In this document: one piece after another, positions 9,760 through 53,800 of the stretch
Layout: every line of letters begins with the position of its first letter
Numbering within the stretch: the first letter of the stretch is position 1
Assembly (NCBI GenBank): GCA_976226885.1
Contig: OZ320315.1
Coordinates: 68,324,001 to 68,388,000, forward strand
Reading direction: 5' to 3'
DNA length: 64,000 nucleotides
DNA from: Iphione sp. A-MEVVRFRX5
Taxonomy: Eukaryota
Translations under genes and position numbers: made by a program
Notes under the pieces: generated by a model
What the model saw: the letters and a program-made list of their open reading frames with translations, nothing else
Told to the model about the DNA's origin: nothing
Database searches by the model: none

Positions 9760-10240
9760 TGACAAATGCTTTATACAATCAAATTAGGGCTTGCCTAGGA
9801 AAATATGATCTGATTTTGTACATTATGTTAAATTTACTGGACATTGACCGTAAAACCCTTAGAGCTTCACGATTGAACTTCATATTCTTTTCAAAGATTA
9901 TACCTAAGTATGTATAACTAGTGACACACTCTATGCATTCATTCTTGATATACACTGAAGCTACTGCAGGCTCATCTGAGGGGAACATAGGTAGAATCTT
10001 AGTTCTGCTAGTGTTCGTAGTTAACCTATTATTTTCATCATCACACTACCACCCTGTCAACAGCCTTTTGAGTCTTTTTAACAAGTTCATTCAAGTCCTT
10101 GCTCATAGTGATAACTAGAGTGTCATCTGCAAACAAAGCGGTGTCAGATTTGACTGCAACAGGTAGGTCATTAATGTACATTGAGAAGGACAAAGGCCCA
10201 AGGGTTGAGCCCAGGGCACTCCGATGTCAATATTGCTAAG
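9760..10240 (-). mobile_element. Decayed CR1/L2-type LINE reverse transcriptase fragment
   Basis: IDIGVP-(frameshift)-GSTLGPLSFSMYINDLPVAVKSDTALFADDTL, then CIECVTSYTYLGIIFEKN...KIRSYFPRQAL. Confidence 0.8.
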
Positions 10241-10629: not shown

Positions 10630-13280
10630 ATCATGAAAGGACGTGTCTTTTGTTTTTGGAACATATGTAGTTTAATCTTAAAGCTGGAAGTAGTCAAATC
10701 ACTTCTGAGGGTGGTGGGGTCCTTTGTTATGTCCCTTCTAACATACACTCAGAAATGCTCAACAAAGATTGTATTGCTATTAATGACATGGAATGTATAT
10801 GGGTAAAGCTGCATGAACCACATAGAAAGACCCTAGTAATGGGAATGATCTATTGCCCACCACAAGGGGATTTGCATGAGTTGTATGCATACATAAAAGA
10901 TAAGATTGTGCAGTTTAAGCAGGAAGGAATTTCAGATATCATCCTGGGCAAAAACTTATTAACAGTCTAAATGACACAAAAAGCAAGAAAGAACTTCTGC
11001 GCCTCACAAATTCTCGTGGGTTGAATCAATATATTCATGAGCGAACTCTCATTAATGAGACTGCACTATCTTGTATTGATTTAATCTTTGCCATTTTAAA
11101 CACAATAAGTAGTAGTGGAACACTTGATGATGCTAGTAGTCATCATCTACCAACCCATGTGGTGGATAAGAAAGTAAGAGAGAGGGTCTGAAAGAAGGTA
11201 AAACAAGCAAGGGATTGGTCGAATTACTCTAAAACAATACTGTCAGAACATCTCTCTGACACAATAACAAACCTCGAGAATGATTCAGAAAATGGTGCGG
11301 AGATAAACTGGAGTTCCCTACAGGATGCCATCGAAAATGCGGTCACAATCCTGTGCCCCATTAAGAAGAGGATCCAGAAGGTGGGAGCTGAGTGGGTTGA
11401 CAGGGAACTAAGTGATTATTTTAGCAACAGGGATTACTTCCTTCAGCAGTTCAGAGCAACAGGTAATAAAGATTACTTTAGAATGTACAGATTTTACAAG
11501 TCTAAAGCAAAGAGGCATTGTTAAAAATTTAAAAAGTCATATTTTGCAAATAGACTGAGAATGTGTAGCGATACTCAGGAGTACTGGAATGTGATTAACA
11601 GCTTAATCCTGAAGAGGGATAAGACCTCACAGGAAATCAAATTAAAAGACAACAATGTTTGGGTAAGCTCAGATAAAGTCTCTCATATTCTAAATGAATA
11701 CTTCACCACACAACCAAAATCACTTGCAAGTAAGTTAACTGTAGTGACTAGTGACATAGACTACAATGCCAAGGGTTGGGAGCTAAGACCAGTGCATACA
11801 GGTGATGTTGTTAAGGTAATATGCAATCTTAGGTGCAACAAACCAAGTGGGTTTGATAACATCCCAATGAGAGTACTAAAAGAGGCACTACTCCTTGGAG
11901 AAAACGTAGTTCGAGATATCTTTAATGACTCAATAGGAAGTTCCTCAATTCCAAGTACATGGAAAATAGCCTGTGTATCTCCACTTTTCAAAAAGGGCTC
12001 ATCAACAGATAAGAAAAATTACGGACCAGTTGCCATCCTGCCTGTAATAGGCAAAGTCAAGAAGAGGCTAGTCTACAATCAGATGGCCGCTTATCTGGAT
12101 AGCATAAACTTTTTCAGTAAACTACAACATGGCTTCATGAAGGAATGAAGCACTGCCACAGCAGCTGCAGGCCTGTTAATGAATATACTAGAGGCGGTCA
12201 ATGACAATAGGCATGTGGGAGCAGTCTTTGTAGACATGACCAAGGCCTTTGATGTGGCTAATCACAACTTAATTTTGGATAAATTGGCAAAGGCTGCAAT
12301 AGGGGGGAAGACCCTTGAGTAGATGAGCTCCTACCTCAGAAATAGACATCAGTTCATAAGATGTAATGGTACATCATCTGACTTAAGAGACTTGGACCTA
12401 GGGGTTCCCCAGGGGAGCATGCTAGGTCCATTTCTCTTCAGTGTGTTGATCAATGATCTACCTGACTCACAGATAGTAATAAATTCCATCATGTATGCGG
12501 ACGATGTGACAGTATATGCAGTAGCATCAAATATGACAGCATTAAGATTGAAACTACAATGGGGTCTCCGAGATGTTGCTGACTGGATGGCAGGGAATGG
12601 CTTAATAATTAGTCCAGAAAAAAATACTACATGCTATTTGGAAAAAGCAGGCAATTTGACCTAGACCTAGCATTTGAAGGTAAGTCTCTACTAAAATGTA
12701 AAGAATATAAATTCTTGGGATTCCATTTGAATGATGCTCTTAACTGGTATTCACTTTCAGACCAACTTTGCAGAACTACCAGGAGTCGGGGGTACTATCT
12801 AAACAAAATGGCATGGCGTCTACCATTCCAAGATAAAGGTAGACTATTCAAGAGTTTCCTGTTGTCTCTGTATGACTAAAGTCTACCGTTTATAGCTGGA
12901 GGCAATAAGAGAGTGATGGACGAATTGCAGATTAACTGCATCAGGGTTATGCAAAACATGACAATTGGTAAAAGGTGTTAGATTCAGTCCAATATCTCAA
13001 TTCGAAGGAGGTTGCATCTGGAGTCACTCCAAGTGTGAGGGACTAGACTAATGTTGTGTCTGATTCATAGGCTTTACTTGATTGGACTATTGAAGGAGAA
13101 AGCCAGGAAAGGGAGGGCAAGGACAAGGTTGAGCTTGGAACGAGTACTGAATGTAAGTAAACCATGAACATCTATTTACAGGACATCTTTTTATATGCAG
13201 AGATAGAGCTGAGCAACGAATTGCTGGTGGCCATCAAACCTAAGTGGCATTCAAGCGTCGACTAACGAGGATGGCGCCAA
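10630..13280 (+). mobile_element. Decayed CR1/L2-superfamily LINE ORF2 (APE endonuclease plus RT) with stops, frameshifts and deletions
   Basis: Endonuclease motifs WNICSL, GGGVLCYV, ECIWVKL..GMIYCPP, SCIDLIF. RT motifs KPSGFDNIP, VSPLFKKG, LQHGF, VFVDMTKAFDVANH, GVPQGSMLGPFLF..INDL, MYADD, YKFLG. In-frame stops at about 12146 and 12319; frameshift near 12640. Confidence 0.92.
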
Positions 13281-17754: not shown

Positions 17755-17930
17755 ATAGTTGACTGAGTATGCTGCCTTGTGGGACTCCACATGTTACCTC
17801 TGCAGGTAATGATGATGTGCCATTGGGTAATACTTGCTATTTCCTCCCAGACAAATAGTTTAAAGCCAACACAGCGAGTCTTTTACTCCAATTATTTGCA
17901 ATCTTTTCAGTAGAATCTGGCGGATCATGT
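17755..17930 (-). mobile_element. CR1/L2-type LINE RT fragment
   Basis: The - strand reads LQIIGVKDSLCWL / NYLSGRK*QVLPNGTSSLPAEVTCGVPQGSILS. Confidence 0.7.
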
Positions 17931-20594: not shown

Positions 20595-21790
20595 TTTTTT
20601 TTTTTTTTTTTATATTGCTTTATTTACCCTGATAATTATATACAGTACGTACGTTTTCTCAGGTCTCTTTCATAACTTTCTGCATTCAGGTATAATGATA
20701 TTTACAATGGGATATTAATGCACGAGATTGTATATACAGGACTATGTACAGGCGGTTGGAAGTTGATTATTTAAACCAATTACGAAGAATTAGGGAGTTG
20801 TTGGTTGGTTTTACTCATAGCATTTTCCATTCTGTTTCGACTGGACAGTCGCCCTTGTCGAGACGATGGTTTTACTCATAGCATTTTCCTTTCTGTTTCG
20901 ACTGGACAGTCGCCCTTGTCGAGACGATGGTTACTCATTCATCGCTTTACCAGCTGGACAATAACCCTTGCTGGTACAGTTTACCCTTACATATTGCCTG
21001 GCTGTCTATCTTGGTGTATTTTTGCAACAACTTTACTTACTCTTTTTCGGAATCTCGTTGTTGATAGGTCCATCATTTCTTGGGGAAGATTGTTCCACAT
21101 TTTTGATCCTTTGTAGGCAATGCTGCATTTGTACGATTCGAAGAGTGGCCTTTCTAGTTGGAAGCATGGTTTTTCAGCTGCCCGGGTGCCTTCCCTCCGA
21201 GCCACCATCATCGTTTCTCCGTTCCTGTGTCGGGTATGCATCAGTTGTAATAACTTTTTGTCTCTACGTTCCTCTAGGCTTTTGCATCCACTTCATCTCA
21301 TTGCATCTGATGTTCTCACTGGTGTACTCCAGGCGGCACGTATAATCTTGTTATACACGCGCCGGAGGCCTTGGAATGTGAGCGCTCGATTGTTTGGGAA
21401 CAATATAATTCCATATTCCATGATGGGCAGAATGGTCGTCTTCATTATTAGAATTCTTTCCCGGAGTCGAAGTACATTTTTGATCCACTTGTAGTAGTAC
21501 AATTTAGCGCCCAGTTCCTTTATTGTCAAGTCTGCCTGTTTGCTGTAGGTAAGACATTGATCTATCGTTACTCCTAGGTAGTTGTAACACTCTACGTTTT
21601 GGAGTTCTTGAGTTCCGAGACGGAGTTTCGGCGAGTCTCTGGGTGGAAAGCGATATCTATACCACATTGCCTTTGTTTTGTTCACGTTGATGCAGATTTT
21701 GTTTTCTAATGTCCATTTCATGATGTTGTTTATGTCTTGCTGAATATGTTCAACTACTCCGGCAACGCAGTCAGTGGTAGTTATGCACAG
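20595..21790 (-). mobile_element. 5'-truncated CR1/L2-type LINE with 3' UTR and poly(A) tail
   Basis: Near-open C-terminal ORF2 (QQDINNIMKWTLENKICINVNKTKAM..YNYLGVTID..LPIMEYG..one TGA..KGSKMWNNLP), ending at about 20987. On the - strand, AATAAA is followed by A17 (T-run at 20595-20611). Confidence 0.88.
20806..20937. repeat. Tandem duplication, 2 x 61 bp, in the LINE 3' UTR
   Basis: Units start at 20806 and 20867 (one substitution), with a partial third unit at 20928. Confidence 0.92.
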
Positions 21791-35705: not shown

Positions 35706-35807
35706 ATGACGTCACTGACGGCGCAGGATGCAGAGGGCGCTACGCCCCTCATGCTGGCCTGCAAGGACCAAGATGTGGCCAAGGTGGACCAGCTGCTCAG
35801 CAAAAAC
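35706..35807 (+). CDS. First coding exon MTSLTAQDAEGATPLMLACKDQDVAKVDQLLSKN (ankyrin repeat 1); the exon with its UTR starts at acceptor 35616
   Basis: In-frame TAA upstream of the ATG; donor GTACGT; phase 0. Confidence 0.85.
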
Positions 35808-38800
35808 GTACGTCATTAACTATCATATATTGGACAACGCAGACATGTTTCCTCATAACAAGTGTAGATGCGTCATTAAATATAACTAATCATGAATAGG
35901 TATGCTATCTATACTCAGATTGTGATAAATTTTATACGTATTTTACTCGTAAATGATACTCTATACTCAGATTGTGATAAATTTTATACGTATTTTACTC
36001 GTAAATGATACATAATATATATTAGTCATGGGTGGACACATGCATTTCAGTAAGAAAGATTGTTGATGATAAGCAGGCAGTGTTCATGTACTTCTTGTTC
36101 AGGTACCCTTAACAACTCAGGATAATACAGGAAAGACGGCACTCCACTACTGTGTGGAGAATGACATGCCGGAGATTGCAGAGAAGCTCCTTGGTGCCAA
36201 TCGCTCCCTGCTGGAGATCAAAGACAATGAGGGTTACACAGCTTTACAGCTCTCCACTATCGCTGGCAACAGACCAATGATTGAGTCCCTTTTGAATGTG
36301 GATGCGGACATCATGACTCGAGACAACGAAGGCCATACTCCCGCTCACTGGGCGACAGGTACGAACCGGGACTTGATCAACTTGAGCGTTAGTAATTTAA
36401 GATGAACACTTGGTAAGAGGCTTTCTGTGACAACGTGTAATCGCATTGCCGCAGTTTTTCAACGAAACCCTTGTTTTTTCCTTAACTCTAAATTGTAGAA
36501 ACCCTCCTATATGCTCTCACAAAATCTATCTACATGTATTTGAATTACTCTACTAAGATAAACAATTTCTTCGTCCTTTTTACATCTCCAGTCTTATATC
36601 CGATGCCGATATGCAATATTCGGATAAAGAACGGCTTCTCAGGGAGCCTGTATATGTAAAGGACATCATAAACCGCACACAATGTCTGGTCAGCAGGCTG
36701 TGAGTTTTTGCCCACACATATCTGTCAGACCATACCAGTCATTGTGAATTCACTGAAGGTTTTTTTCGCCCCGTTGTACACCTCAAGTCTGTGGCCACGC
36801 CAGTCTTCTCGACTACCTGGAGCAGAACGGCGCTGACCTGAGCGTGGAGGACGTGCATGGCGCGCGCCCCATCCACTACGCGGCCCAGATGTGCGGGGCG
36901 TCGTCGGACACTGACCGGAAGACCGGTCTCAACATGCTGCAGAAGCTCATCTCTAAAGGCATGGACGTCGGTGTGGAGGACAACGATAAACGGTCCCCTC
37001 TGATGTGGGCCGCCAGTGCAGGTAAATCACTCTCAAAGTCCTGCAAATCGACCCCTTGAACAGAATTGGGCGATTCTCGTATTTCCTGCTGCACGATGGA
37101 GCAGCGCACGGGTTTTAAGAAAGTTTGTTCCCTGTTCATGATGGTTTATGTGTAAAGGCCGTGCACAAGAAACTGTAAAAGAAATTTCAATCTAAACCTT
37201 TTTATAAAAATTCAGTACCACGACAATTCTCTCATGAGTCATGGAATAATATAGGTTCATCATCATTTTGATGGCAGAACTGACCCCTTGGAATAGCCAT
37301 GTGTAAATATTATCGGACCTCTTTGTTAAAAATTAATGTCAGTGTTCTTTTGGTCTTTTACAGGTAGTCCGGCCGGCATCGAGACGTTGGTTAACGCCGG
37401 GGCTTCTGTGGATTCGGCGGACAAAGACGGCCTTACGGCATTACATTGTTGTGCTTCAAAAGGATACGCTTCTTGTGTGGATGTATTAAAACGTAAAGGT
37501 GCTAATCTAGACAGCATGGACAAAAATGGCTGCACGCCCATGTTTTACTCTGTGACGTTAGGACATATGAACTGTACAAAGGAACTTATGAGCGGTGGTG
37601 CTGACGCCAACCATCGAGACAGTCGCGGCCGAACGTAAGTTTGTTTCTTCGTGTCACAATTAAGCAACATCTTTCTCATAGTTTTCACCGTGTGCTTGGT
37701 TCGTTGTAAGGCACTGAGAATTACATAGAGACTCCTGACGGATTTAGTACAAATGTACCGGATAGATTAATGCTTATGACAGAACACTATTGATTCTTCA
37801 TGTGGATTATGTTTACGTTCAATGGTCTACCATCATCTTGCTCTATCACTATCTGAACTTACTTTCACTCTCAACCCGAGTTTTCGTAAAGACATTTGGT
37901 GCCGCCATACCATACAGAGGATCCATACACAATACTAGGCCTAAGTGAAAGAAGACGGTTAGCTCTGCGTCTCCTAGTCTTCGATTCACGCCCGACAGGG
38001 GTATATTATTGAAGTGAACCTGTCAATCTTGTAGGGAGCGTTCACTATGCAGAACAATGGAAGCACCACTTTCAGCCCATATTTAATTCACTTCCGAGAG
38101 GCAGAGGACTAATATTTGAGAACTACATTGTATTCATGAACCGTTTGGGTGGACAGGATCCACAATTATTTACAAACTTAATCATATCAATAATCATTGG
38201 AGCTAAATCGTTTCCATATTATTCATCAACCTCCCATTTTCATACCCTAATCCAACGTAGTTAAATTATGTGGTTGACATATCAAACAATATCATGGAGA
38301 GAAATAAGTACTGTCGAGAGTGAGAAGTGTAAATAAACCGGCTTACTCTTGGTAAACCCTACAACGCCGTCAGCAGTATAGTATAAGAAATACCTGTCCC
38401 ATTTGGATTGATCTCATTCTTGTGGAAGGACAGCCTACATGTAGATTATTCGATCGTGGGTCTTCAAAGTGACTGTTTTGGATGACGTGACTGGTACACT
38501 CTTAAGTCAATGACAAATTAAGACCCTTTATAGGTTTTGTGACCCATGTTCAGGTTCATAAACCGTATTTGTGTTGCAAAATGTATCCTATGTGACTCAT
38601 GCTGAATAATGGAATATACCAATCATGTACATGTTCATTGAAAATACAAGCATCCGGAGACTCAGAATCCACATTTTGTTCCTTCACGGATAAATTTGAA
38701 ACACATTGGCAGTTTTCGGTCCTGATTTTTCGTTATCCGTCTGAAATAACAAACAGAGAGGCTATATATGCAGGCATGATTTACACTGCATTTCACCTGA

Positions 38801-41800
38801 GATACGATGGGGTCAGCCTCATCAATGGCCTCTGAAGAAACACCGGAACCTAGACAAAAGTTGGCAGGCCTTGTCGAAGGACACGTTTGAGTTTGTCTAA
38901 ATCCCGAGGCATGACCTTGGACTTTTGCCCTGGCGCATTGGTTGAACCTTGTGTCAATACTGGATCCTGACCCAGCCAATAGCACAAATGAGCTAAGGAG
39001 ATATGTCCACCTACGATGTTGACCGTGGCCTCTGCTGATGTAATGAGCTCACCCCACATTCACGAGGAGCAGTGCATAGAGATTTGATATATGGACATTT
39101 CTTACCACCTATATATCATCTCCTATTTGGCTTGCCAAGCTGGAAAAAACCGCATGTTCAAGTCTTAACAGATAACTTGGAAAAAATACTCTATGATGCC
39201 CGACCTACTAATGGAGTAGGTACAATGGATAGCTAGACCTAATCCCCAAACCTTACATACCTATGTACTTCACAAATCTTCCCTAGGCCTTGTCGCCTGC
39301 CTTGAGGATTGACGTCTACTCTCAGGAGTTTGTTCCAATTATTGACATGATAATCACATTTACATATACAGTCAAAACCCTTTTTAAGACCACTTCAATT
39401 TCAGACCAAATTTAATTTAAGACCATTTAGCTGGGAGCCAAAATCTTGATATCTGTACAGTTGATTCCCTATTTAATACCCGATTTGCCAATGAGACCAC
39501 TTGAGCTTGGTCCCAAGTGGTGGTCTCAAATAGGGTTTCCACTGTACATGTATAAGTCAGTAATATCACAAGATATTTTATAGGTTCTGCACGAAGGGAA
39601 GATATATTTTTCATCTTGAGAGATAAGTGCAGATAGATGGGCATAATGCTCACCCGGCCGAATTCTAATAGTTATCTATTCAAATTAACATTAAGCTGAC
39701 CTTAAAGTACATCCTCATGTGGCAATATTGTCTTTTCTAGGTGTTGAGGTCTGAATTATACATGTACATGTTGTTAACTCAAGTTAGACAATGTGTCATT
39801 AATGTTGTAGATGCCCTTCAGTGACTAAACCAATCTTTAAGACCCTGGTATTCTTTTAGCTCCTGCACTTGCAGTTTGTTCAGTGTCCATATTTCACATA
39901 GTCCACGAAACTGCGAAGGCCATGGCAACTAACCCCGGAGAAGACTCTATATCATCACGACGTCTCTTCCAGCATATGAGAGTTCATGCTTCCATAGATT
40001 TGATTTGAATAAGTGAAAAATCTTTGCGATTACACAAATGAGGAGGCTAGCGAGCGATTAGCCTGAATAGCTTTTTCGCGTGTTTGCCTAATTATGCTTG
40101 TTTGCCCATGATCCTTCCAGTCTTCCATAACAAACTAAATACCCGAGTTGTTGCCAGCAGCACACCTTAGTTTTGCTGTCAATACTTCTCCACTCGAATG
40201 AAAAATCTTGAATCAGGGTTCAGCAAGGGGCTAAAGCCATTTAGAGTTTAGAGGTTGCGGGATACGTCGCACCGTGAGCAGCTTTGACCTTTACCGACTC
40301 AACCCTCGATAAACTCGTCCTGTGTTGTGTCTGTCCATGCCAAACTATCTCTGTCTACTATGATTATTTCTCTGTACCTGTCTTAAAGGGCCAGCCTTGT
40401 GGCCAAGCGTCCTGCTCCGGCTTGAATGATCAGCTATGATGCTAACATAGTTGCTTTTTAATATGCAAATGTCATATTCTCGGGTTGCGAGAGTTTTCCG
40501 CAAGAGATTTTTTAAAAGTCCTATAGAAAAGTGATTCGCTATCAAGACCTTGTTACGATGGGCATGATACAAACTCGCCAAGTTGGTTTACATTTCCTTC
40601 TCTTGACGCAAATCTTTTTATCCTATATTTTGACATAAGATATGAATAGAGAGTATAGCCTGAATGCTAAGGGCTCGTCTGCAGTCACTTTCCCTGTTTT
40701 CTTCGCAGTTTTCCTGGTCCATTTCCAAGAAAGTCCTGCATAGTTGATAAAGATGTGCTATCTAACGATGTCATGCAGGCCAGTAGAACCTCAGTTCGTT
40801 ACCGCTGCCAACAGAGGGGACCTGATTTCTGGAGAACCATTATTTTTTCCGTGCATTTTTGCAAAGGTCCTGTTTACTGGTCCAACAAAGGAGGGAACCA
40901 CACAAGCTTTGCAAATGTGTAGACGTAATCTCACACAGAGAATCCTCAACAACGAAATAAGGCATATGAAGCCCTGAATGAGGCATGCAAAAAGATGTAT
41001 AACAGCGAAAATCAGACAGAAAGGACCGCTAGAATATTAGAGTGCCTGGATGACCATTGAGACATCTGATGCTAGCACCTACCACATGAGACATAAGAGC
41101 CTATATATATTGATCGCCCACAGATATGGGAGCTCCGATTTTTATTGCTTATTACATATCGACCGGGCTACCATGTCACTCTACAAAGTTATGCAGAGAA
41201 TATTTTCTTTTGGATTGTATAATTTCTGGGACATCATTTTGTTGGATTATATCTCTGCCTGTAGTTTTAATTAATTGTCAGTATCGACCAGAGAGAAGGT
41301 AATAACCTATAACATTTGGCTAGTCTGCCTGCGGCGGTGATGGGTGAGGGTAATAGTTTTTGTTACTAGCGCTAGAAATGATTGCTAAGTTATTCAGTAA
41401 TGTAACGTTTACTACGCATTCTTACTGTAATACGCATGTATGTATATCTAGACATATTTTCAAAACTCTTGTGTTATCTTTAACTGTAATGTTGTCGCCT
41501 TTTCCCTTTTCTTGTTCTTCCTTCTGTCATTTTCCATTTGGCCGTAGTAACATATGGAGGTCATTATTGCTTTAGGCCCGCCCACTGTGCAGCAGCCAAA
41601 GGAGCACTAGACGCTGTGAAGTTGCTTCAGAAGAACAGTGCCGACGTTTGGCAGAAGAGTAACCGAGGGGAATATCCTATACACGAAGCCTCTCTCGCCA
41701 AACAAACAGGTACATCTTTTCATGTCATTTGGGTTCATGTCGAGGGATGTGATTCCACGAATGCATAGTGAATGAGTGCATATGGAGTGGGTGATGTGGG

Positions 41801-44800
41801 AAACTATGATAGTATATGAATGCACATGACATGTCTGCTTCCATATTTCCAGTGTGTATATACATGTATGTATTTTAGTGTAATTCTTTTGCACTGTCCA
41901 AAACAGGTAATATCCATAAATTTCATGAAGCATGCACCGTATAGCAGAATAAAATGACATCACCCACCAGTAGAGCATGGAAGTGGGCCATTGGGTCAGG
42001 CCCAAGCAAAGAGATACATGTACAAAATCAGTTTAACTTGCATATTATTGATATAAATAGCTTAGTTTGCAGAGTTAGGCCACAGTTTCATGAAATTTGT
42101 GCAAAGATTTGCATAATTTACACGGTTATAATTCAGTTTTCAGAATCTGCAAAGAGCTGCTCACAATTTAACACTGACTCGGTAGCTTTCAATGAGGAAA
42201 GGGCTTAGATGCGTTTCAACAACAATTTACACAGTTGTGGCTAATACCTATCTACATTCATTGATTCATTTAATTCATTCACACAATGGTCTGTAGCCCT
42301 CTTTTTAACAACTGGATTCTGGTCTGTGCGAAATGAACCTCTATTTCACACGCTACCGACTTACTCGAAGCTGAACAGAACATACAATATTTAATACCTT
42401 CTCCTAGAGATACAAATATGCTCAGAGGGCCAGCAGAGGCCAGTTGAGATACGCTATTCAACGATTGCTTTTTTTTGAGTGACCATTGAATCTGACCATT
42501 CAGAGAACCTCCTTTCCAAAGCATGGGCATTTGCGTCATAGACGAACAAAGCTGTCTAGTATGGGGTCAATGGAAAGGCTGAAATTCTGTGTTAGGTTTA
42601 TAGATAGAACAATTTACTTTTGTATGCATAAAGAGGATATATCAATAATGATTCAAGTAAATTTTGAATTTTTTTCAGTAGTTCCTAAATTACACGGGGT
42701 CAAAGATGAGAATTTTGACATTGGAAAGGCCCAGAGAGGCTGCAGAATGTCTAGCCGGAAGCATATGGTTATGACGCTTCACAGTGGGATGAGTTATCAC
42801 TCCAAAAGCAATCAGAGAATTTGAGGGGAACTTTCACTTGGTCAGGGGACTTAAGTATATGCAAATCTTAGTATATAAATGGGACTAGAAATACCACCCC
42901 TGTTTACTTTTAGCCTGTTGAGCACTGAGCTGATAATTTCTTTACACAGCCATTCCCTCAAGAAACTTCCTTTTTTGACAGATACGGTGGAACATCTTTT
43001 AGTCAAAAATGAAGACAAAGTCAACGTTGCAAACAACGAGGGACGGACATGTTTGCATATCGCTGCATTAACTAATAACCTTGCTTTGTGCAAGAAACTG
43101 GTCGCTCGTGGAGCAAAGCTTAATCACAAAATGAAAGGAAGGGTGAGCTAAGTTTACCTATTATTCACTGATTTTTTTAAACAATTGTGTATATGTACAT
43201 TATACGGTAACTTTTTCTCCCTGTTGATAAGCATTCATTGAGACAGACCTAGACACAGACCTTTTAAAAAGAGCTCCTCGAAACTGTCTGTATAGTGTAA
43301 TAATAGGTAAGGGTATCTACACAGGAGGTGGCCTACACTAGGAATAAACGGATTTTATGTAAACACTATCGGACACTTTCACCATGATCTAAACGTTTTT
43401 CTTCAATTTGAAGTAATGCGGTTGCTTCAAACCTCAAGGCGCGTGCATATAAAAACGACAAATACGAATTTTACTCAAACACACTGTTATTCATATTAAA
43501 TTTCTTTTTGTGATACCGGACTTCTCGTTATACACGGAAATATAAACACTTTTCTATAATGGTTTCTTTTAGGATGCAGAAATAACTCCATACGACGCAG
43601 CAAAGTTAAAACGATATGACGAAACAGCAGAATTTTTAAAGATTCATGGTGCTAAACCTGCGAAGGAAGTCCTTGATGAGGAAGAACCTAAAGTTCAGGA
43701 AACGATACCAGAAACAGCCCGTGAAGAGCAGGAGGAAGACAAACCTGAAGAGAAGGAAACTGAAGAACCGAAAGAGGACGAGAAACCTGTAGAAGAACCA
43801 AAAGAGGATCAGCCTGAAGTGAAGGAAGAAGATACAAAGGAGGAAGTGGAAAAGGTTGAGGAAAAAGAGCCTGCCGCTGAGGAACAAACTGAACAAAAAG
43901 AAGAACAAGAGCAAAGTACTCCTGAAGAGACTAAACCAGAAGAAAAGGTTGAGGAAATGCCGGAAGAGAAACCTGCTGCGGAGCAACAACAGGAAGCCGC
44001 CCAGGAACCGGAGAGAGTACAAGAGGAGCAGAAAGCTGAAGAGGTGGCTGCTAAAGAACAAGAGCCTGCAGCTGCTGAGGTGCAAGAGAAGCAAGAAGTA
44101 GAACAGGTTAAGGAGGAGAAAGCTGAGCAACGTCCAGACGAGGCACCAAAAGAAACGGAGGAAAAGCATGAACCAAGCGTAGCCCCTGCTGTTGTTGCTG
44201 CAGGTGCCGTTGCATCGCCCAAACAAAAGGATAAAAAGAAAGGCAAAAAAGCAAAGGATAAAGAAGAACCAAAAGAACAACAGGAAGAAATCAAACAGGA
44301 GGAGACGCCTGCAGAACCTAAGGAAAATCAATCAGCAGATCCGGTGGTAGAAAAACAGGAGAAGCCTGCAGAATCTAAGGAAAATCAGTCAACAGAACCG
44401 GTGGAAGAAAAACAGGTTGAAGGTCAAGCAGTTGAAAAGAAAGAAGCAGAAGTTCCAGATAATGCTGTAGGTGCCGCTGCCGTTGCAGGAGCGGCAGTTG
44501 TAGAGGAGAAGCAGAAGGATACTAAAGAGGAGGCGCAGGAACCAGAGGTATCTGCACAACAACAACCTGAGGTTGAAAATGAGAAAAAGCCTATTGGGGA
44601 GAAAACGGAAGAGGAAAAAACACAGGAAGCTCCGAGAGGCGCCGAAATGAAAGATAGTCCAGAGGAAGTCAAGAATGAGACTGCTCCCGAAAATGAACAA
44701 GGAGAACCAAATGTGAACGTCGATCCAACAATTGTTGCGGCAGGTGCTGTTGTAACAGAAACGGGACCTAAAAGTCCAAAAACTGAAAAAAAGAAAACGG

Positions 44801-47800
44801 AGGTGAAAGATAAAAAGCAAGAGCCCCCACAAAGCCCAAAGGTTGAGAAGAAAGAGGATCCCAAAAGTCCTAAAAGCAAGAAAAAGCAAGCCCCGGAGGA
44901 ATCCAAACCTCCAAAGACCCCAAAGGATGGAGAGAAAAAAAAGGAAAAAATCCAGACAAATGAGGCCATCAAAGATCCAGCTAAAAAGAAAAAAGCTTCC
45001 ACAGAAAAACCGGAGAAGGAAACCGAAAAACAGAAACTAGAAAAGGCAGTAAAACCAGAAAAAGCTGTTGCTGTAGGAGCTGCTGCTGCTGCTGCCAAGA
45101 CCAAAAAAGATTCGGATAAAAAACTTAAAGAGGATCCGTCTAAAAAAGAGAGGAAAAAAGAGGACTGGGATTATGATGCACCCGATGCAGATCATAAAGT
45201 AGACACCTGGAACGAGGGATATACAGGTCCACAGGACAAGGATAATAAAAAGGGGCCTGGGTATAAGAAGCCAGAAGGTAAAAGTAAGATTGACACAGGT
45301 GGACAATCTCACAGGGAACCGAAGTCAAAAGAAGGTGCCGATAATACCACTAAAAAGAAAAAGAAAGGTTCAGAGGAACCTTCTCAGGATGCTGCTGAAA
45401 AGGACCCAAACAAGAAAAAGGGTGACAAAAAAGATCAAGGAACACAAGAGAAGAAGAAAGGAGAAAAAGGTGAGTCTGAAAAGAAAGAGAAAAAAGAAAA
45501 GACAGATAAACAGAAATCAAAGGAAGGTGAGGAGAGTCGTGTTACTTCGCCAAGAGAGAATGCTAATGTAATGGCTGGGGCTGCAGGTCTTGCGGCTGGT
45601 GCTGGAATGGAAAAGAAGGAGAAAAAGAAGAAGGCAGTGGCCGAGAAGGAGGCAGGTGACAAAGAAAAAGATCCCTCTGGTGATAAGTCCAAGAAAGGAG
45701 ACGCAAATAAAGACTTAGAAAAGGATGGATCTCATGCAGACCAAGCAAAAGAATCACCCAAAAAGAAGAAAAAATCCCAAGATGAAGCCCTAGTGGAGGA
45801 TACCCCTAAGAAGAAGAAAGAAAAGAAAGTAAAATCGGAGGCACCAACAGAAGAGGAAACTGCTAAAAAGGAGAAAAAAGAAACAAAGTCGAAAGATAAG
45901 GAAGCTAAAAGTAAAGATGAAAATATTGCAACAGCTCGTAAAGAAGAGGAAGGGAAGGTTGGAGCTGATGAAACCAAAGATACACCAAAAAAGAAGAAAA
46001 AAGCAGAAAAGGAGGAGGCATCTGGTGAAGATACTAAAAAGCAGAAACGATCAGAGAAAGAGGATCTCAGTAACAATGAAAAGGTAGATGCCAAAGGACA
46101 AGATGGCAAAGGTGAGAGTAGGACTAAAACATCTGATGAGCCAAAGTCTTCAGACACACAGAAACAGGAAGGTCTTGAAGATAATGGAGCTCTGTCACAG
46201 GATAGGTTACAGGATGATAATACCAATGTTAATGCTGCATTAGCTGCAGGGGCTGTTGTAGCTTCTTCTGAAAAGGAAGACAAAAAGTTGAAAGCATCAC
46301 CTGGTGAACAAGAAGATGGTAAGAAGAAAAGTAAGGGAAAAGAAAAGACTGAGAAAGATGGTCTCAATGCTAAAGATGGGAAAACAACAAAAATAGCTAA
46401 AGATGAGGCTGACAAAGTGAATCAACCTCATAAAGATGAGGAAGGCAAAGTTGGAGCTGATGAAACCAAAGATACACCAAAAAAGAAGAAAAAAGCAGAA
46501 AAGGAGGAGGCACCTGGTGAAGATACTAATAAGCAAAAAAGATCAGAGAAAGAGGATCTCAGTAACAATGAAAAGGTAGATGCCAAAGGACAAGATGGCA
46601 AAGGTGAGAGTAGTACTAAAACATCTGATGAGCCAAAGTCTTCAGATGCACAGAAACAGGAAGGTCTTGAAGATAATGGTGCTCTGTCACAGGATAGGTT
46701 ACAGGATGATAATGCCAACGTTAATGCTGCATTAGCTGCAGGGGCTGTGGTAGCTTCTGAAAATGAAGACAAAAAGTTGAAAGCATCACCTAGTGAACAA
46801 CAAGATGGAAAAAGGAAAAGTAAGGGAAAAGAAAAGACTGATAAAGATGGTCTGGATGAACAACAAGATGGAAAAAGGAAAAGTAAGGGAAAAGAAAAGA
46901 CTGATAAAGATGGTCTGGATGAACAACAAGATGGAAAAAGGAAAAGTAAGGGAAAAGAAAAGACTGATAAAGATGGTCTGGATGCAAAAGACAAGAAACC
47001 TGAAGTGAAAGCTAAAGATGTGGCTGAAAATGTAAATCAACCAGAAGGAGATGAAAAGCCGAAAACGTCTAAAAAGAGCTCAGATAAAGAGAGCAGTAAA
47101 GAAAACAATCAGGCAAAGAAATCTAAAAAAGAGAAAACAAGTGACGAAGATTCAAAAGGAGGGGCTTCAGAAAAAGGAAAGAAAGAGAAGGAAGCAGACA
47201 GTAAAGAAAAGGGAAAAGGAGACACAGAGACAAAAGGAGAGAATGAAGCGACTGATACGAACACAACTAATGTAGAGGCAGCGGCTTTGTTGGCAGCGGG
47301 TGCTCAAGTGGAGAAAAATAAAAAATCGGAATCCAAGAAAGAAAAGAAGAAAGATTCATCTCATGATGAGAAACCTGATGGTGAAAAGAAACAAGGGATT
47401 GAGGAGGAAACTGTGGAAGGAGCACAAAAGCGAAAAGACAAGAAGACAAAGAAAGATAAGTCTGATGCTGCTGATGTATCACAACGTAGGGCTCAAGATG
47501 AAGAAGTACCAGCAGAACAGCAACCAGAAGAAAGTCCAACAAAAAAGAAGAAAAAATCGAAAAAAGCCCAGGATACAGAAAATGAATCGGAAGAGAGCAA
47601 AGGTACGGCATCTGAAGTGGAAAAACACGTTGAAGGAGAGGAAGTGAAAGAGTCTTCAAAGAAAAAGAAAAAGTCCACAACTGAGAAAGATGATGTAGAT
47701 CAGGAGGTAAAAGTAAGCTCAACAGAAGCTGCAGCAGCAGTCGTAGGATCAACCGAAGAAAGTCCCAAAAAGAAGAAAAAGAAAAAGAAGGCAGATACCT

Positions 47801-50800
47801 CCGAGGCTGACACACCAGCAGACTCCACAGACGTTGAAAGGACCCAGGATTCCCAGGACGAGGGCCAACAACCAACTTTACCAGAGCATGAAAATCAGGT
47901 GAACAACGTGGATGTAGGTGTCGATCATGCATCAGCTTCTAAGAAAGAAGCAACAGATACTGCGGGGATTGAGGCAGCAGCAGGCAGTGAACAGCCTTTA
48001 GAGGCCAATAAACCAGCAAAATCACAGGGCAAGGCTGCTGACTTGCAGGATGCAAAAATGGAGGATGTAGAGGCTACAAACATAACCGATGCAAGTCAAG
48101 GAGCGGGCGGCGATAGCGAAGAAGCTGTGATTTCTGACGGCACCCAGGGTCAACCAGGCGATGCCTCGTCAGGTCCCAATGCTGGAGAGGATGATAACCG
48201 AACCCGTGACTTAGCAATAGCTGTAGGTGCTGGTGCAGCTGCTGGCGCAATGGGAACCGCCGCCGCCGCAGCAGCTTTGAGTAAAGACGGGAAGAAAAAG
48301 AAGGATTCAAGCAAAGGTACGTCTGTAGAAGAAGCTCCCTCCGCAGGTGACAAAGACAAGTCAAACGCCGATGGCCGGGCGACTACAAGGGATGTGATGG
48401 AGCCAGACTCGGGAGACAGTTCCCTCAAGGCACCAGGGAGACAAGAACCGAGTGCTGCGGATCTTGGTGCTGATCCAAACCTCGCAGTCAACTCTGCAGC
48501 TCTAGCGGCGGCGGGGGCTCCTGGAGCAGATGTCGCCAAAGATGGCCCTGCCAAAGCATCCGAGGGTCAGACACCTGAGCTGGCTGATTCAAGCCAACGT
48601 AAAGACCCAAAAAATGACACCGCGACGGAAGGGAAAGCAGCTGCTTCTAAAGACAGTAAAGTAGACGGTGCCAAAGATGCAGATGGAGAAGGAACCAGTA
48701 GGAAGACGCCTGCTAAGAAGGCCGAATCTAAAGCCAAGAAAGAGCCCACGTTAATTGAGATGGCCGCAATGCAAAAGAAGAAACCTGCTGGGGTTGAACC
48801 GCAGAAAGAGACTAAAACTAAGACTAAAAAGAAGAAACCCGAACGACCAATAATCCCTATGGGGCAAATTCCCATGCCATCGTCTCTCAGTGAGACAACC
48901 AACATCACTGACAAAGATACTAAGAAGACGGACAAAGCGGCCAAAAGTGAGCGGAATTCGCGAGCCGAGGATGGGAGGGCCCAGGCGGCCCAGGCGCTCG
49001 CCAAGAGAAGGAAGAAGATGAAGGATCCGATTGTCGACTCGGACGATGAGTTACAACCACTTGTTAAACCACTCGGCAAGAAGAAGACCGAGGAGCTCAT
49101 GCGTGCTCAGGACGAGGAGGACGTGGCCAATATTGTGCTGCCTCCCTCGACCGGAGATCGACGGGGCAAGAAGCCATCCTTGCAGGATCGCGTCGACAAG
49201 ATCCTACTCAGCCCTGCCCAGCAGCGTGAGAAGCAGCGGCGGCAGAAAGGCCGCAATAGCCAGCTGGATGACACCGATACAGAGGACAGGGCCACTAGGG
49301 AAACATCGCGCGACCGTCGAGTGCCCAGAAACCGATTACGTCTGACTGACGACGCTATGGAGTATGACGCACGCGCTAAAGTTGACACTTGGAACCGGCA
49401 GTCTCGACGGAGAGGATGGGATTCGAATGATGAGCAGGACATGCTCAGGATATCAGGCATTGGCAAGTCTGATTCTGGACCTCCTACGAATCGATCCGAC
49501 GCCGGAACACGCGGTCCGACACCGGCCGGACCACCTGAACGGTGGGCTGAGAAAGCCCCCAAGAAGCGGAGAGAGAAGCCCAAAGTCGTGCCAGACATCG
49601 ACCCCCGGCCTTTAACAATGGCCTCGGGTAACCCGCGGCAGGAGATAGCTGCCGCTGCGTTGAAGAAAAACAAGAAGGCAAAGGAAGCACGACCTAAGTC
49701 GGTGATGGATACGTCGAGACGAGAGCCAGGAGAGGCGGACGAGGAATGGGAGGACAACAGACCCATCAAGCGCAAGCGTGAGTTACCGCGCATCGAACGG
49801 CGCACGCTCAAGAACGAGATCCAGGAGCTCGTGCGAATTTTTGAGGCGAAGACCACAGCGTTAACGGGCATTAACAAGTCGCGCAAGTTGACCCTTTATC
49901 ACAGTTATCGCGGGGGCATGGCAGAGAAGAAACTCGTCGACCACTTAAAACTGGATTACAACACACAACAACGAGTGAAAACACGAGGAGACTTCGACAA
50001 CGTACAGGACTGGGAGCGATATTTGGCAGGTGCGTTATGTTTGGAGAAACATACTTCTTTTCCTCTTTTAATTTTTCATCTATCCCGATTTTAATACGTG
50101 TATTTCCAATCGAGTAATGCTTGCATCATGCTCATGTAAATAAAATTCTTGTATAGGCCTACGTTCAGCATGTCGCATATCAACATGTACGTCAGTCTTA
50201 TATTACTTGTGTTTGGGTAAGAAACTGGTAATAATGTCTTTCCTACTGTTGCAGAGATCGTCGCGCAGGCTGAAGCCGATGAGCGAGCATTGCGGACCGG
50301 CAGACAGGTAAAGAGATTCATATTGTCAGCATAAATCCAGGGGCACTTGATAAAATCACACTGACGAAGAGAGGAACCGTCTTTACACTTTTACCACAAA
50401 GTCAAGTTTTTGTCTTTTTCATAATGTTTGATGATATTTCATAGATTTGAGTTTTGTGTCTGTCACAGAGTAGTATATAGAGTTGTAGATTTTAAAGACT
50501 GATTTCATTTTTATACTTCCTACAATTTTGTGTCACCAAGTAATTCAGATGTAAGGCAGCTAGCTGACAGGCTGAATGAACCGGAATTTGCGTATTAAAA
50601 GTAGCAAGACACACAAGCTGGTTAGCCTTATAATCAAGTCAAGAGTTACAGTTGTGAAGGATGTTGTCAAGTTGCAGACCATGGCTGAACCGTCAGCCCC
50701 GCCGCATTCCCAGGACGGGAGCCTGAACGTATCTGCTGACTGGTACACCCACGGCTGCACACAGCCCAACCTAGGAGCCATCTGGCGGCGCTATAAGGCG

Positions 50801-53800
50801 GCCATGGTATTATCGTCAAGATCCTAAGTAGAGGCCTCCTCGTAGCTGTCGCTTTTATCTTAAAGCTTACCTTAACTAGTATGTGGTAGCATAACTGTCG
50901 CCCTGTCTCTTCAAGGGACCTCTGGGTCGTAATGCTTGCTTACTGGTTGCGGGGAAATCTGCTGTTCAAATTTAACCCTGTTTGGGCCTAGAAGGTTTTT
51001 CAGGGAAGACTCATTTCAACGTATTCATCTGATGTTGTCCCTGTAAGAAGTAAGACTGTCCTCTTCGGTCGGCACCGTTTCAATATTCCTTTTACTCATC
51101 CTGCTGTACGACCACTAGTTAAGCTGTATCTTTTAGATTATCTGTCTTAAAGCTTCTGCAACTATGAGAATATTTTAGTAAAATTAGTGTAATTGTGCAA
51201 GTATCTGCCATGCATGCCATTTGAAGAACCCTGTTCGGTTTTCGGTGCTTTTTCCAGAATGCAGACAAATGCACATTCGTGTAGTTTATTATACAATTTT
51301 ATAACTTTGGCAGACGAAGCCGACTCATCTTACCACTGGAATTTTTCCATGGATGTAGTATGAAAAAAAGGGATTCTCATCATAAAAATATCATTTATTT
51401 TTATGGTGTGATGCCAGAACAGTCCCTTGTTTATAATGAATCTTGGGTTCAAATCCTAGAATTGCCTTCGTTCCATCTTGTGCATATCTGTGAGGGTATT
51501 GTGCAGAAAGAGTGCTTTGTCACTCTATCGATGAAGAATTATTTTCCATTATGGACTAGTTTACATAAAAGACCAACGTTTGGCGTTATCTTCGATATCC
51601 CAGAGCAAGTGAGGAAACATCGGAGTTGCATAAGTCACACCTGTTAATTTCCAGATGTTAGGCTTAAGTTAAGGTATATGCATGAGTAGGTATTTACTGA
51701 ATTGCATGGGCTTTGCTTTCCTGCATGTTAAGGTTTTGGTCGATGTGCTGAAAGGTTCTTCTTGGAGCTTTTATTGGCATGCTTGTAGCTGATAGCAAAA
51801 TCAATGCATGCTCTGTGAGTAAATAGTTAATAATCCAAAGACAGCCCTCCGAACTGGACTGCCTCACCATTTAACCATGACACCAGTTCTAACCCTTGGA
51901 CACATGTGTACTGATAACCTATCCTAACCTATCGCCGACCAAATAAATTACCTTTCAGCTGAATATGTCAGCATGGACAATTCCTGGTAGCAGTTAGGTT
52001 GGTAAAACTGCCCAGTCTTCCCAACATCCGATGAATTATTACTTATGTATATCCAGTTTTTTGCATTTGAGAAACGTTTGAGTACAACTATTTATAATTA
52101 TACACATTTTTAACGTCTTTCAAAGAGCCTGTTGTGTAGCTTGATTACATCTCAATTTGTGGGGCCCTTGACCTGTCCAGTTGTTTAAGAACTATCACAT
52201 ACAGGCGATTGGTAAATCTTGAACCTGCCCATACGATCTTAGACTATTAGCATTTTGCAGGTGTTGGTTCTAACAACTTCTCCTCGGTTGTAATGATAAA
52301 AAGAACAGTTTAATCATGCAGTAAGTGTATAATGTATAAACATAGATTAAATGATAACTTATTTTGATATTTGGCCTTTCCCAACAAGGGGACAAATATA
52401 TATGTGGGACAAGAATGATATGGTCAATTTACGAAGGAAGCTCTCTCTATATATAATTTTCCATGAACTAGACTGATTGCTTTCCTTCAGTCACACACTC
52501 TAAACTACCTGTTTTCATCACAGGAGGATCCCGACAGACGAGGTAAGTGGGATGAAGACAGTCTCGATTCTACCCCTCGATTCAACCCATTACAAAGTCG
52601 AGAGAGCCTGAATTCATTCTGGACACAATCGACCCGGCGCGAGAAGGGGGCGACCAAACTGGGACCGGTTCGGGACGGTCGCCGTCACCGCGAGGTGGAG
52701 CGGCACGGCAAGCTCACGTCCGCCTACGGCCCAGTGCTGCCACCTGAACTGGCGCGGCTGACAGCAGAGAGATCGTCGACCAGCATCACGGCGGCGTCCA
52801 AGTCGCCAGGTAGCCTGACTGCCAGCCTGTAGCCGAGTGTAGAACAGCGTGGACTTCATACTCACCTGGTGTGGTGTGACCACAGTAGCCATGCCGTGGG
52901 GCATGGGTTCCTTTTATTAACATGCCTTTTGTTTCTGTTCCTCGTAATCTGATTCTTTCTACCTGTGTAAGTCTTATAGGCCTACCTTTCACTGCTGTGA
53001 TTTCATATGATATTTCGTCTGAACACATTTGTATCTTTGCAAATGGTATAAATGATCATACTAGGGAGTATAAAGATCAGGTGATTCTTCTACGAGTAGA
53101 AAAAGTATATTTTAATCTAGACCTTTATAACCAATGTAGTGTTGTTTTCTTAGCTTCCTTTAATTTCTCTGCCTATGTATTTTCCTACTTTGTATCCGTT
53201 TTTACATACATGTAAAACCAAACTAGTATTTATGTGTTCATGAAACTACTAAAGTCGTGAATTGTTTCCAAAATAGAATATCTTCCAATATCCCTCGAGA
53301 TACATTCACACGTATACTCTATAGTTTTACGTTTGCCTTTTTACACTATTGCATTGTTATAAGCGTTATGCTATTAGTATTTATTGTGACTAACATATCT
53401 CATCTAAGAATAGTAATTCAGCCATTCTCAGATGTCCCATGCGAAGGTAAATGTGCATCAAATATTACCATAGATGTAATACGACTATTGGTTTTATATA
53501 TACAAGACCTAATTGTAATGGTACATCTTCCTTTTAAATATCTAAACGAATATGGTTGTAACTTGTGAATTTATTTCGATTGTCGAGTAGTTTGAAGAGC
53601 GCATCATTCAGTTACCTTTATATTGAAGTATCACTATCATAATACGTGTATTCTGTGTCGGGGAGAGTTGGTGTCCATCTATTTTATATATCGCATTGAA
53701 ATATATCCCCGAACATTTGTTACAGTTCGGAAAAGAGTACTTCTCGGAGGTGACCGTTTGCATATTTATTCTCTTTGTATACATGTACACGTTTCCTGCC

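What the first reader, a model, noticed from the sequence alone, without database searches (positions are those of the whole stretch)
43573..50029. 6.5-kb single exon inserting about 2,000 disordered, highly charged residues behind a 12-ankyrin module
Seen: one uninterrupted 6,457-nt exon, while all other exons of the gene are 27-286 nt. The composition is zoned: E-rich acidic (first about 350 aa), K/E/D mixed with poly-K, A/D/S/G-rich, then R/D-rich. Established: giant exons encoding long disordered segments define giant ankyrins and other cytoskeletal scaffold or spacer isoforms. Inference: this is a different ankyrin-repeat family (no ZU5 or death domain seen) that independently acquired a giant exon. 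The exon is phase 0 to 1 and carries the last ankyrin repeat, so it cannot simply be skipped. It could act as a molecular ruler or condensate scaffold.
Basis: partly seen in the sequence, partly recalled or inferred. Interest (0 to 1): 0.7.

Follow-up and report, generated by a model that had tools for sequence, protein, structure and literature searches.

The report
Giant disordered exon in unnamed ankyrin gene
A real 6.5-kb coding exon makes up about 80% of an unnamed 12-ankyrin-repeat gene of an invertebrate; it is the stretched version (about 2,150 residues) of an exon that has only about 220 to 950 residues in most relatives, and no RNA data could be obtained to show how it is spliced.

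Summary
Window 43573-50029 (+) is a 6,457-nt stop-free frame running from a strong acceptor to a GT donor. The chance of no stop is about 1e-50, and codon periodicity is clear. It begins with the 12th ankyrin repeat and ends in a conserved helical segment.

It is not a canonical giant ankyrin. It has 12 repeats rather than 24, and there is no ZU5 or death domain on this contig.

It is not a newly acquired exon either. The same exon, with the same acceptor, the same phase-1 donor and the same two end anchors, occurs on unnamed invertebrate contigs. Its lengths there are about 222, 611, 709, 822, 945, roughly 1,240 and 2,452 residues, against 2,152 here.

The extra length lies mostly between two conserved short motifs. 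It carries in-frame tandem duplications, and these differ between the two giant forms.

All homologues keep an acidic-then-basic order. The middle is predicted to be unstructured, with mean pLDDT 33 and no secondary structure.

Three word searches and one exhaustive search found no named relative. The gene is single-copy in this genome. No RNA run was listed, so internal splicing is untested and function is inferred only.

The scan has noted other giant exons elsewhere in this genome.

The parts
35706..35807 (+). Putative first coding exon (candidate ATG at 35706), ankyrin repeat 1
   Evidence: Weak ankyrin-family matches, all below Pfam's cut-offs (best Ank_2, 18.4 bits against 27.3). Repeat motif and phase-0 donor at 35807. 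Conserved in L002. The start codon is inferred; upstream exons are not excluded.
36103..36358 (+). Exon with ankyrin repeats 2, 3 and the first half of 4
   Evidence: Repeat motifs. Conserved in L002 at 43-50%. Boundaries come from splice sites and phase arithmetic.
36788..37021 (+). Exon with the second half of repeat 4, repeat 5 and the first half of 6
   Evidence: Pfam Ank_2 30.8 bits, over the cut-off. Conserved in L002. G|GTAAG donor.
37364..37634 (+). Exon with the second half of repeat 6, repeats 7 and 8, and the start of 9
   Evidence: Repeat motifs. 51% identity to L002.
41576..41709 (+). Exon with repeat 9 and the first half of 10
   Evidence: Repeat motifs. Conserved in L002 and L006 at 47-54%.
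42982..43142 (+). Exon with the second half of repeat 10 and repeat 11; ends in phase 0
   Evidence: Pfam Ank 29.2 bits. 64% identity to L001; conserved in L002 and L006.
43573..50029 (+). The giant exon: 6,457 nt, 2,152 codons plus 1 base, phase 0 to 1
   Evidence: Orthologous uninterrupted exon of 2,452 residues in L001.
43573..43674 (+). 12th (last) ankyrin repeat, the conserved N-terminal anchor of the exon
   Evidence: 47-58% identity to the exon starts in L001, L003 and L008. The same acceptor position occurs in the homologues.
43678..44772 (+). Acidic E/P/V/K-rich zone, residues 36-400, net charge -65, no aromatic residues
   Evidence: The acidic N-terminal block is kept in all homologues.
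45145..45342 (+). Conserved island 1: a two-part short motif (Y-x-A-P...KVD[ST]W, then Y-K-K-P-x-G-K-S-K-I-D)
   Evidence: 60% identity to P0001 inside otherwise unalignable sequence. Also present in P0002 and P0004.
45343..48820 (+). Expanded K/E/D-rich then A/D/S/G-rich spacer, holding most of the lineage-specific extra length
   Evidence: The gap between the two KVD[ST]W motifs is about 1,394 residues here and 1,641 in L001, against 202 in L002. Not alignable to P0001. AlphaFold2 mean pLDDT 33 with no secondary structure for residues 401-1400.
45935..46876 (+). In-frame tandem duplication, 492 nt x 1.9, 92-95% identical
   Evidence: 8 synonymous against 8 non-synonymous codon differences in 110 codons.
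46794..46984 (+). In-frame tandem repeat, 63 nt x 3, 100% identical
44300..44416 (+). In-frame tandem repeat, 57 nt x 2.1, about 90% identical
48841..50029 (+). Conserved C-terminal part of the exon, residues about 1757-2152, including the second KVDTW motif at residue 1936
   Evidence: 37% identity over 411 columns to P0001, E 3e-63.
49690..50028 (+). Family-defining conserved helical segment, about 75 ordered residues, ending at the phase-1 donor
   Evidence: Found in 13 proteins of 1.84 billion. Alignment A1. Predicted helices at 40-74, 79-94 and 105-112 of the piece, pLDDT 84-94 in the core. Single copy in the genome.
50255..50307 (+). Small exon after the giant exon, 53 nt, phase 1 to 0
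   Evidence: Strong acceptor and GTAAAG donor. Core conserved in L001.
50714..50806 (+). Small exon, 93 nt
   Evidence: 61% identity to L001. Splice sites. Boundaries are approximate.
52524..52832 (+). Last coding exon with TAG stop
   Evidence: 56% identity over 108 residues to L001, where stops lie just upstream of the shared acceptor position.

Best explanation
This is one large coding exon of a single-copy, so far unnamed gene. It is constitutive in the sense that skipping it breaks the frame. The inferred protein has about 2,689 residues: 12 ankyrin repeats, then about 2,000 residues of charged unstructured chain, then a short conserved helical segment and a tail of about 150 residues. 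The exon is ancestral. In all relatives one exon joins the last ankyrin repeat to the helical segment through an acidic-then-basic linker. In this lineage and its nearest sampled relative the linker grew to more than 2,000 residues. Most of the growth lies between two conserved short motifs and came from repeated in-frame tandem duplication of low-complexity K/E/D-rich sequence. Shown: the exon, its splice phases, its orthology, the length series, the duplications and the conserved charge order. Inferred: that it acts as a long flexible polyampholyte tether between an ankyrin binding platform and the C-terminal module, with the conserved short motifs as docking sites. On this view overall charge layout is under selection and exact sequence or length is not.
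For: Open frame, splice sites and chance estimate. Codon periodicity, and no in-frame Met before residue 129, so it is not a stand-alone gene. Ankyrin exons upstream. Exon phases sum to 8,067 nt = 2,689 codons. The orthologous exon in L001 is 2,452 residues and uninterrupted. Shorter versions with both anchors in one open frame occur in L002, L003, L008, P0004 and P0009, and L002 and L006 have the same ordered ankyrin exons upstream. All homologues read G after the Y-L-x end and then lose similarity, which fits a shared phase-1 G|GT donor. There is one copy in the own genome. Tandem arrays with periods divisible by 3 occur here (57, 63, 492 nt) and, with different units, in L001 (60, 105, 327 nt). 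Negative-then-positive charge deciles are seen in all seven exons. No Pfam domain. Charged-residue fraction 0.45, hydrophobic residues 11%, no Cys. Mean pLDDT 33 with no helix or strand in 1,000 residues.
Against: Four AG|GTRAG donor-like sites and five weak acceptor-like sites lie inside the exon, so shorter internally spliced forms are possible. The homologues are unnamed open-frame calls on metagenome or host contigs, so species and true orthology are inferred from synteny of exons only. L006 is a 1.8x contig with frame breaks. A single-sequence AlphaFold model is weak evidence of disorder. The tether function is inference from composition.
Confidence: 0.72

Rival explanations
1. The spacer is an active polyanion-binding or nuclear-targeting region, not a passive tether. 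The K-rich zone has repeated [S/T]-P-K-K-K-K-K modules. These would act as nuclear localisation signals or as DNA-, RNA- or microtubule-binding segments. The protein would then work like the ANKRD11/ANKRD12 nuclear cofactors or like the basic microtubule-binding part of giant ankyrin-B.
For: Five [ST]P[KR][KR] sites and twelve runs of four or more K. The module recurs 5-6 times at the DNA level (families D3 and D4). Net positive charge in residues 401-900. Giant ankyrin-B binds microtubules through its giant-exon insert (PMC7401806 abstract).
Against: No KKE[EIV] motif of the MAP1B type. The K-rich modules are not conserved in position or sequence in P0001. The short homologues lack them. Nothing was tested for localisation.
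Confidence: 0.25
2. The 6.5-kb frame is mostly removed in mature mRNA by one or more internal introns (an exitron). The usual protein would then resemble the 700-950-residue forms of relatives.
For: AG|GTRAG sites start at 45468, 45525, 46110 and 46602, and weak pyrimidine-tract AG sites give possible exon starts at 48891, 48895, 49157 and 49222. These bracket the expanded zone. No RNA data.
Against: An intron would not stay open for thousands of bases (about 1e-50). Pyrimidine-tract AG sites are 5-7 times rarer inside than in flanking 6.4-kb controls, 5 against 24-34. The L001 exon is also uninterrupted over 7.4 kb. All tandem units are multiples of 3.
Confidence: 0.12
3. It is a giant isoform exon of a canonical ankyrin (ANK1-3 or Ank2 type).
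For: Ankyrin repeats plus a giant exon encoding a disordered insert, as in the 7.8-kb exon of giant ankyrin-G (PMC12798937 abstract).
Against: 12 repeats, not 24. No ZU5 or Death match on contig C4, while the genome has such matches on other contigs, for example C26. No Pfam domain in the exon or in the downstream exons.
Confidence: 0.01
4. It is a non-coding purine-rich low-complexity tract that is open by chance, or an independent intronless or mobile-element gene sitting in an intron.
For: A-rich and G-rich strand with strong skew. Long antisense open frames.
Against: Only one of three + frames is open. Codon periodicity, and no in-frame Met before residue 129. Both ends are conserved as protein in several species and complete an ankyrin repeat begun by the splice partner. 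Antisense frames have no Pfam match.
Confidence: 0.01

Closest known systems
Giant ankyrins (vertebrate 480-kDa ankyrin-G and 440-kDa ankyrin-B; Drosophila Ank2-L/XL)
   Same: An ankyrin-repeat scaffold in which one exon of 6-8 kb encodes a long extended or disordered segment (PMC12798937, PMC7401806, PMC6703079).
   Different: Those have 24 repeats, ZU5-UPA and a death domain, and their giant exon is an optional, neuron-specific insert. Here there are 12 repeats and none of those domains. The exon cannot be skipped in frame and carries an ankyrin repeat plus the family's conserved C-terminal segment. No sequence similarity was found.
ANKRD11 / ANKRD12 nuclear cofactors
   Same: This is the closest architecture. 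By my own knowledge, not tested here, they have N-terminal ankyrin repeats, then one very large exon encoding about 2,000 K/E/S-rich disordered residues with nuclear signals, then a conserved C-terminal region.
   Different: By my own knowledge they have only about 4-5 repeats. Their repeats are said to resemble BARD1's (PMC13385800). No named relative of any kind appeared in the sequence searches, so membership is not supported.
Titin PEVK and Big tau exon 4a (disordered, acidic, exon-encoded spacers)
   Same: Residues 36-400 are 61% P+E+V+K, acidic, and free of aromatic residues and Cys. This resembles entropic-spring or spacer segments. Big tau's exon 4a is likewise acidic and disordered with diverged sequence (PMC12896622 highlights).
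   Different: Big tau's insert keeps its length across species, whereas this one varies tenfold. There is no sequence relation and no immunoglobulin or microtubule-binding repeats around it.
Exon elongation adding disordered regions (general evolutionary pattern)
   Same: Long internal exons preferentially encode disordered regions (PMC9825244 abstract). This is a clear case with a traceable length series.
   Different: That is a general trend, not a family. Here the growth mechanism (in-frame tandem duplication) and the fixed anchors are visible directly.

Membership tests
Canonical ankyrins (ANK1/2/3, Ank2) | 24 ankyrin repeats in the membrane-binding domain | tested here: not met
   12 repeats in seven exons.
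Canonical ankyrins (ANK1/2/3, Ank2) | ZU5-ZU5-UPA module | tested here: not met
   No Pfam match in the giant or downstream exons. A six-frame genome search for ZU5 finds matches only on contigs C10 and C26, none on C4.
Canonical ankyrins (ANK1/2/3, Ank2) | C-terminal death domain | tested here: not met
   24 Death matches in the genome, none on contig C4.
ANKRD11/ANKRD12 | Detectable sequence similarity of the C-terminal conserved region or the ankyrin block | tested here: not met
   An exhaustive phmmer search with the C-terminal 403 residues gave 13 hits, all unnamed open-frame calls. The word searches gave no named protein. The ankyrin block could not be searched as a whole, because the joined model was left out by rule.
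ANKRD11/ANKRD12 | Short block of about 4-5 ankyrin repeats (own knowledge) | tested here: not met
   12 repeats.
Ankyrin-repeat proteins in general (Pfam Ank clan) | Repeats scoring above Pfam cut-offs | tested here: met
   Ank_2 at 30.8 and 29.9 bits, and Ank at 25.2 and 29.2 bits, in two exons. A third exon scores below the cut-offs.
Unnamed family defined here (12 ankyrin repeats, acidic-then-basic linker, helical C-terminal segment) | Last ankyrin repeat and the conserved helical segment encoded in one exon, ending at a phase-1 donor after Y-L-x | tested here: met
   Seen in the window, L001, L002, L003, L008, P0004 and P0009.
Unnamed family defined here (12 ankyrin repeats, acidic-then-basic linker, helical C-terminal segment) | Same ordered ankyrin exons upstream | tested here: met
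   L002 has all six; L006 and L001 have the last one or two, as far as the fetched DNA reaches.
Single alpha-helix (SAH) or coiled-coil rulers | Long uninterrupted helix-prone E/K/R runs; helix predicted | tested here: not met
   No run of 21 or more helix-prone residues; P+G+S is 15-24%. No helix predicted in residues 401-1400.

The most novel reading that the evidence does not exclude
An unannotated, invertebrate-restricted ankyrin scaffold family in which one exon is a hotspot for linker growth, from 222 to 2,452 residues. The expanded forms alone gain regularly spaced Ala/Gly/Val islands within a block polyampholyte. These islands would act as self-association 'stickers', so that linker expansion created a new condensate- or network-forming property instead of merely adding length.
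Probability: 0.12. Interest if true: 0.6.

Novelty: new member of a known kind. Interest (0 to 1): 0.38.

Why it matters
Giant exons that encode disordered spacers are known from a few well-studied scaffolds. Here the same exon can be followed across relatives from about 220 to about 2,450 residues, with fixed anchors at both ends, fixed splice phases and visible in-frame duplications. That makes it a clean natural series for two questions: how disordered linkers grow, and what stays constrained while they do (the charge order and the short motifs, but not sequence or length). The gene family itself has no name and no known domain beyond the ankyrin repeats. If the protein's partners were found, the length series would allow a direct test of whether tether length matters. 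The practical value is modest until RNA, protein and species information exist.

Tried and rejected
- Pfam on the giant exon and on the three downstream exons: no family.
- Pfam on P0001: none.
- Named relatives: three word searches, one exhaustive phmmer search and a cluster look-up gave only unnamed contig calls.
- PDB profile search: only a chance-level row, E 0.54.
- ESM Atlas by features: no usable hit.
- Foldseek against PDB: no match.
- Atlas fold search: all TM-scores below 0.5. The helical segment therefore stays uncharacterised.
- RNA evidence: none was listed for this stretch, so read laying could not be used.
- Canonical ankyrin: rejected.
- Single alpha-helix or coiled-coil ruler: rejected.
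- MAP1B-type KKE[EIV] repeats: none.
- Ala/Gly/Val islands as membrane spans: nine of the ten found are 9-14 residues, too short. The 24-residue one (residues 1547-1570) has no counterpart in P0001. I judged this unlikely but did not test it.
- Minus-strand open frames of up to 262 residues: no Pfam match, as expected for the antisense of a purine-rich coding strand.
- Rfam over 35-53.5 kb: nothing.
- Species identity: not obtainable with these tools. Earlier notes only call the animal worm-like.
- Exons were handled one by one, by reference, and the total length comes from arithmetic on coordinates.


Full report
**Observation**

In the frame that starts at 43573, the stretch 43573-50029 (+) has no stop for 2,152 codons plus one base. 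The frame opens exactly at 43573, directly after a pyrimidine-rich tract and a TAG acceptor. Position 50029 is followed by GTGCGT. The other two + frames hold 66 and 218 stops.

Given the exon's own base composition (A 40%, G 28%, T 14%), the chance of no stop is about 1e-50. No other + frame stays open for more than 123 codons. Codon positions differ strongly: position 1 is 45% G and 7% T, and position 2 is 51% A. The first in-frame Met is at residue 129, so this is an internal exon and not a stand-alone gene.

**Gene around it**

Ankyrin repeats lie in six small exons upstream. Splice sites and phases give this model:
- 35706-35807
- 36103-36358
- 36788-37021
- 37364-37634
- 41576-41709
- 42982-43142
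- the giant exon, 43573-50029
- 50255-50307
- 50714-50806
- 52524-52832, ending in TAG

The lengths sum to 8,067 nt, which is 2,689 codons exactly, and the giant exon is 80% of that. There are 12 repeats, the last at the start of the giant exon. The start codon is inferred and upstream exons are not excluded.

**Relatives**

A word search with the conserved C-terminal 403 residues found one protein, P0001. It is a 2,490-residue open-frame call on a 604-kb ENA contig, fetched as L001. It aligns with the exon at three places only:
- the last ankyrin repeat
- a 20-residue island near residue 540
- the last 400 residues, at 37% identity, E 3e-63

The flanking exons are also conserved.

An exhaustive phmmer search of 1.84 billion representatives gave 13 hits, all unnamed calls from ENA, JGI or Logan contigs. 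Two further word searches added nothing. The conserved C-terminal segment occurs once in the 1.18-Gb genome.

**The exon is ancestral and stretched**

In each homologue for which enough DNA was available, one open frame runs from the last ankyrin repeat to the conserved segment that ends Y-L-x. The acceptor sits at the same position. After Y-L-x comes G and then unrelated sequence, which fits a phase-1 G|GT donor.

| Source | Exon length (residues) |
|---|---|
| P0009 | 222 |
| L008 | 611 |
| L003 | 709 |
| P0004 | 822 |
| L002 | 945 |
| L006 | about 1,240 (1.8x contig with frame breaks) |
| this window | 2,152 |
| L001 | 2,452 |

L002 has all six ankyrin exons in the same order upstream, and L006 has the last two.

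The distance between the two KVD[ST]W motifs is 202 residues in L002, against 1,394 here and 1,641 in L001. Most of the extra length therefore lies between conserved islands.

Growth by in-frame tandem duplication is visible. This window has units of 57 nt (2.1 copies, 90%), 63 nt (3 copies, 100%) and 492 nt (1.9 copies, 92%), plus older dispersed copies of a module with S/T-P-K-K-K-K-K. L001 has different units of 60, 105 and 327 nt. Turnover has therefore continued separately in the two giant forms. The two 492-nt copies differ by 8 synonymous and 8 non-synonymous codons in 110, which suggests mild constraint on small numbers.

**What stays constant**

All seven exons compared have net negative charge in the early deciles and net positive charge in the late ones. 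A two-part short motif recurs in the longer forms. The last roughly 75 residues are predicted as a helical hairpin plus a short helix, with pLDDT 84-94 in the core. That segment has no match in Pfam, PDB or the ESM Atlas.

**Disorder**

- Charged-residue fraction is 0.45 and hydrophobic residues are 11%.
- There is no Cys, and residues 36-400 and 1401-1750 have no aromatic residue.
- P+G+S is 15-24% and there are no long helix-prone runs.
- A single-sequence AlphaFold2 model of residues 401-1400 has mean pLDDT 33 and no helix or strand of any length. This is weak evidence on its own but agrees with the rest.

**Ala/Gly/Val islands**

Ten islands of 9-24 uncharged A/G/V-rich residues interrupt the spacer here. 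Four are present in P0001 and one in L006. None occurs in the short homologues. They belong to the expanded forms. Their role is unknown, and the scan lists them as a separate finding.

**What it is not**

It is not a canonical ankyrin. It has 12 repeats, no ZU5 and no Death domain on this contig, while such matches exist elsewhere in the genome. It is not demonstrably ANKRD11/12, although that is the nearest architecture by my own knowledge. It is not a rigid helical ruler. The minus strand and Rfam gave nothing.

**Open point**

No RNA run was listed, so internal splicing is untested. Inside the exon, pyrimidine-tract AG sites are 5, against 24-34 in flanking controls of equal size. Four consensus-like donors do exist. 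The maintained frame shows that the whole stretch is translated at least in some transcripts, but shorter forms cannot be excluded.

**Most likely working**

This part is inference. The exon would encode a long, flexible, acidic-then-basic tether linking a 12-repeat binding platform to a small helical module, with conserved short motifs as docking sites. The K-rich zone may also bind polyanions or carry nuclear signals. The tenfold length range argues against a ruler whose length is conserved across species.

**Context**

Earlier notes of this scan report other giant coding exons elsewhere in the same genome: a 26-kb acidic exon, a 19.5-kb plakin-repeat exon and a 5.9-kb exon in a SORBS/CAP gene. 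They describe the animal as worm-like. Giant exons therefore seem common in this genome. I did not test those notes.

**Verdict**

It is a new member of a known kind, a giant exon encoding a disordered linker, in an unnamed gene family. Interest is moderate.

Noticed in passing
window 44180-48520 (residues about 200-1650 of the exon): Ten Ala/Gly/Val-rich uncharged islands of 9-24 residues are spaced about 80-220 residues apart in the charged spacer. Similar islands occur in the other expanded homologues (four in P0001, one in L006) but not in the short ones. The 24-residue island at residues 1547-1570 is followed by a K-rich stretch.
   Followed up: partly
window 46794-46984: A 63-nt coding tandem repeat is present in three 100%-identical copies. 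It is either a very recent expansion, and so a candidate length polymorphism, or an assembly effect.
   Followed up: no
window 45145-45342 and 49336-49500; P0001 588-655 and 2226-2290: A two-part conserved short motif (Y-x-A-P...KVD[ST]W-N, then about 20 residues later Y-x-K-P-x-G-K-S-K-I-D) occurs twice per protein in the long forms. The second copy here keeps only the first half. No known family matches it.
   Followed up: partly
window 10695-12622 (+), 9782-10211 (-), 21059-21745 (-), 17756-17836 (-): Fragments of LINE-type retrotransposon genes (reverse transcriptase and endonuclease), similar to an element that sits in the intron before the giant exon in L001.
   Followed up: no
L001 206-10001 compared with window 43142-43573: The intron before the giant exon is 430 nt here but about 9.8 kb in the relative, where it holds a retrotransposon (RVT_1, Exo_endo_phos) and a NADAR-domain open frame on the opposite strand.
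   Followed up: no
window 48001-50000: The conserved C-terminal part of the exon is much more G+C-rich (55%) than the expanded A-rich part (41-44%) and the surrounding DNA (about 40%).
   Followed up: no
G000 contig C26 near 12.68-12.70 Mb and 28.86 Mb: ZU5 and Death matches lie close together at these two places. They are likely the genome's canonical ankyrin or UNC5-type genes.
   Followed up: no
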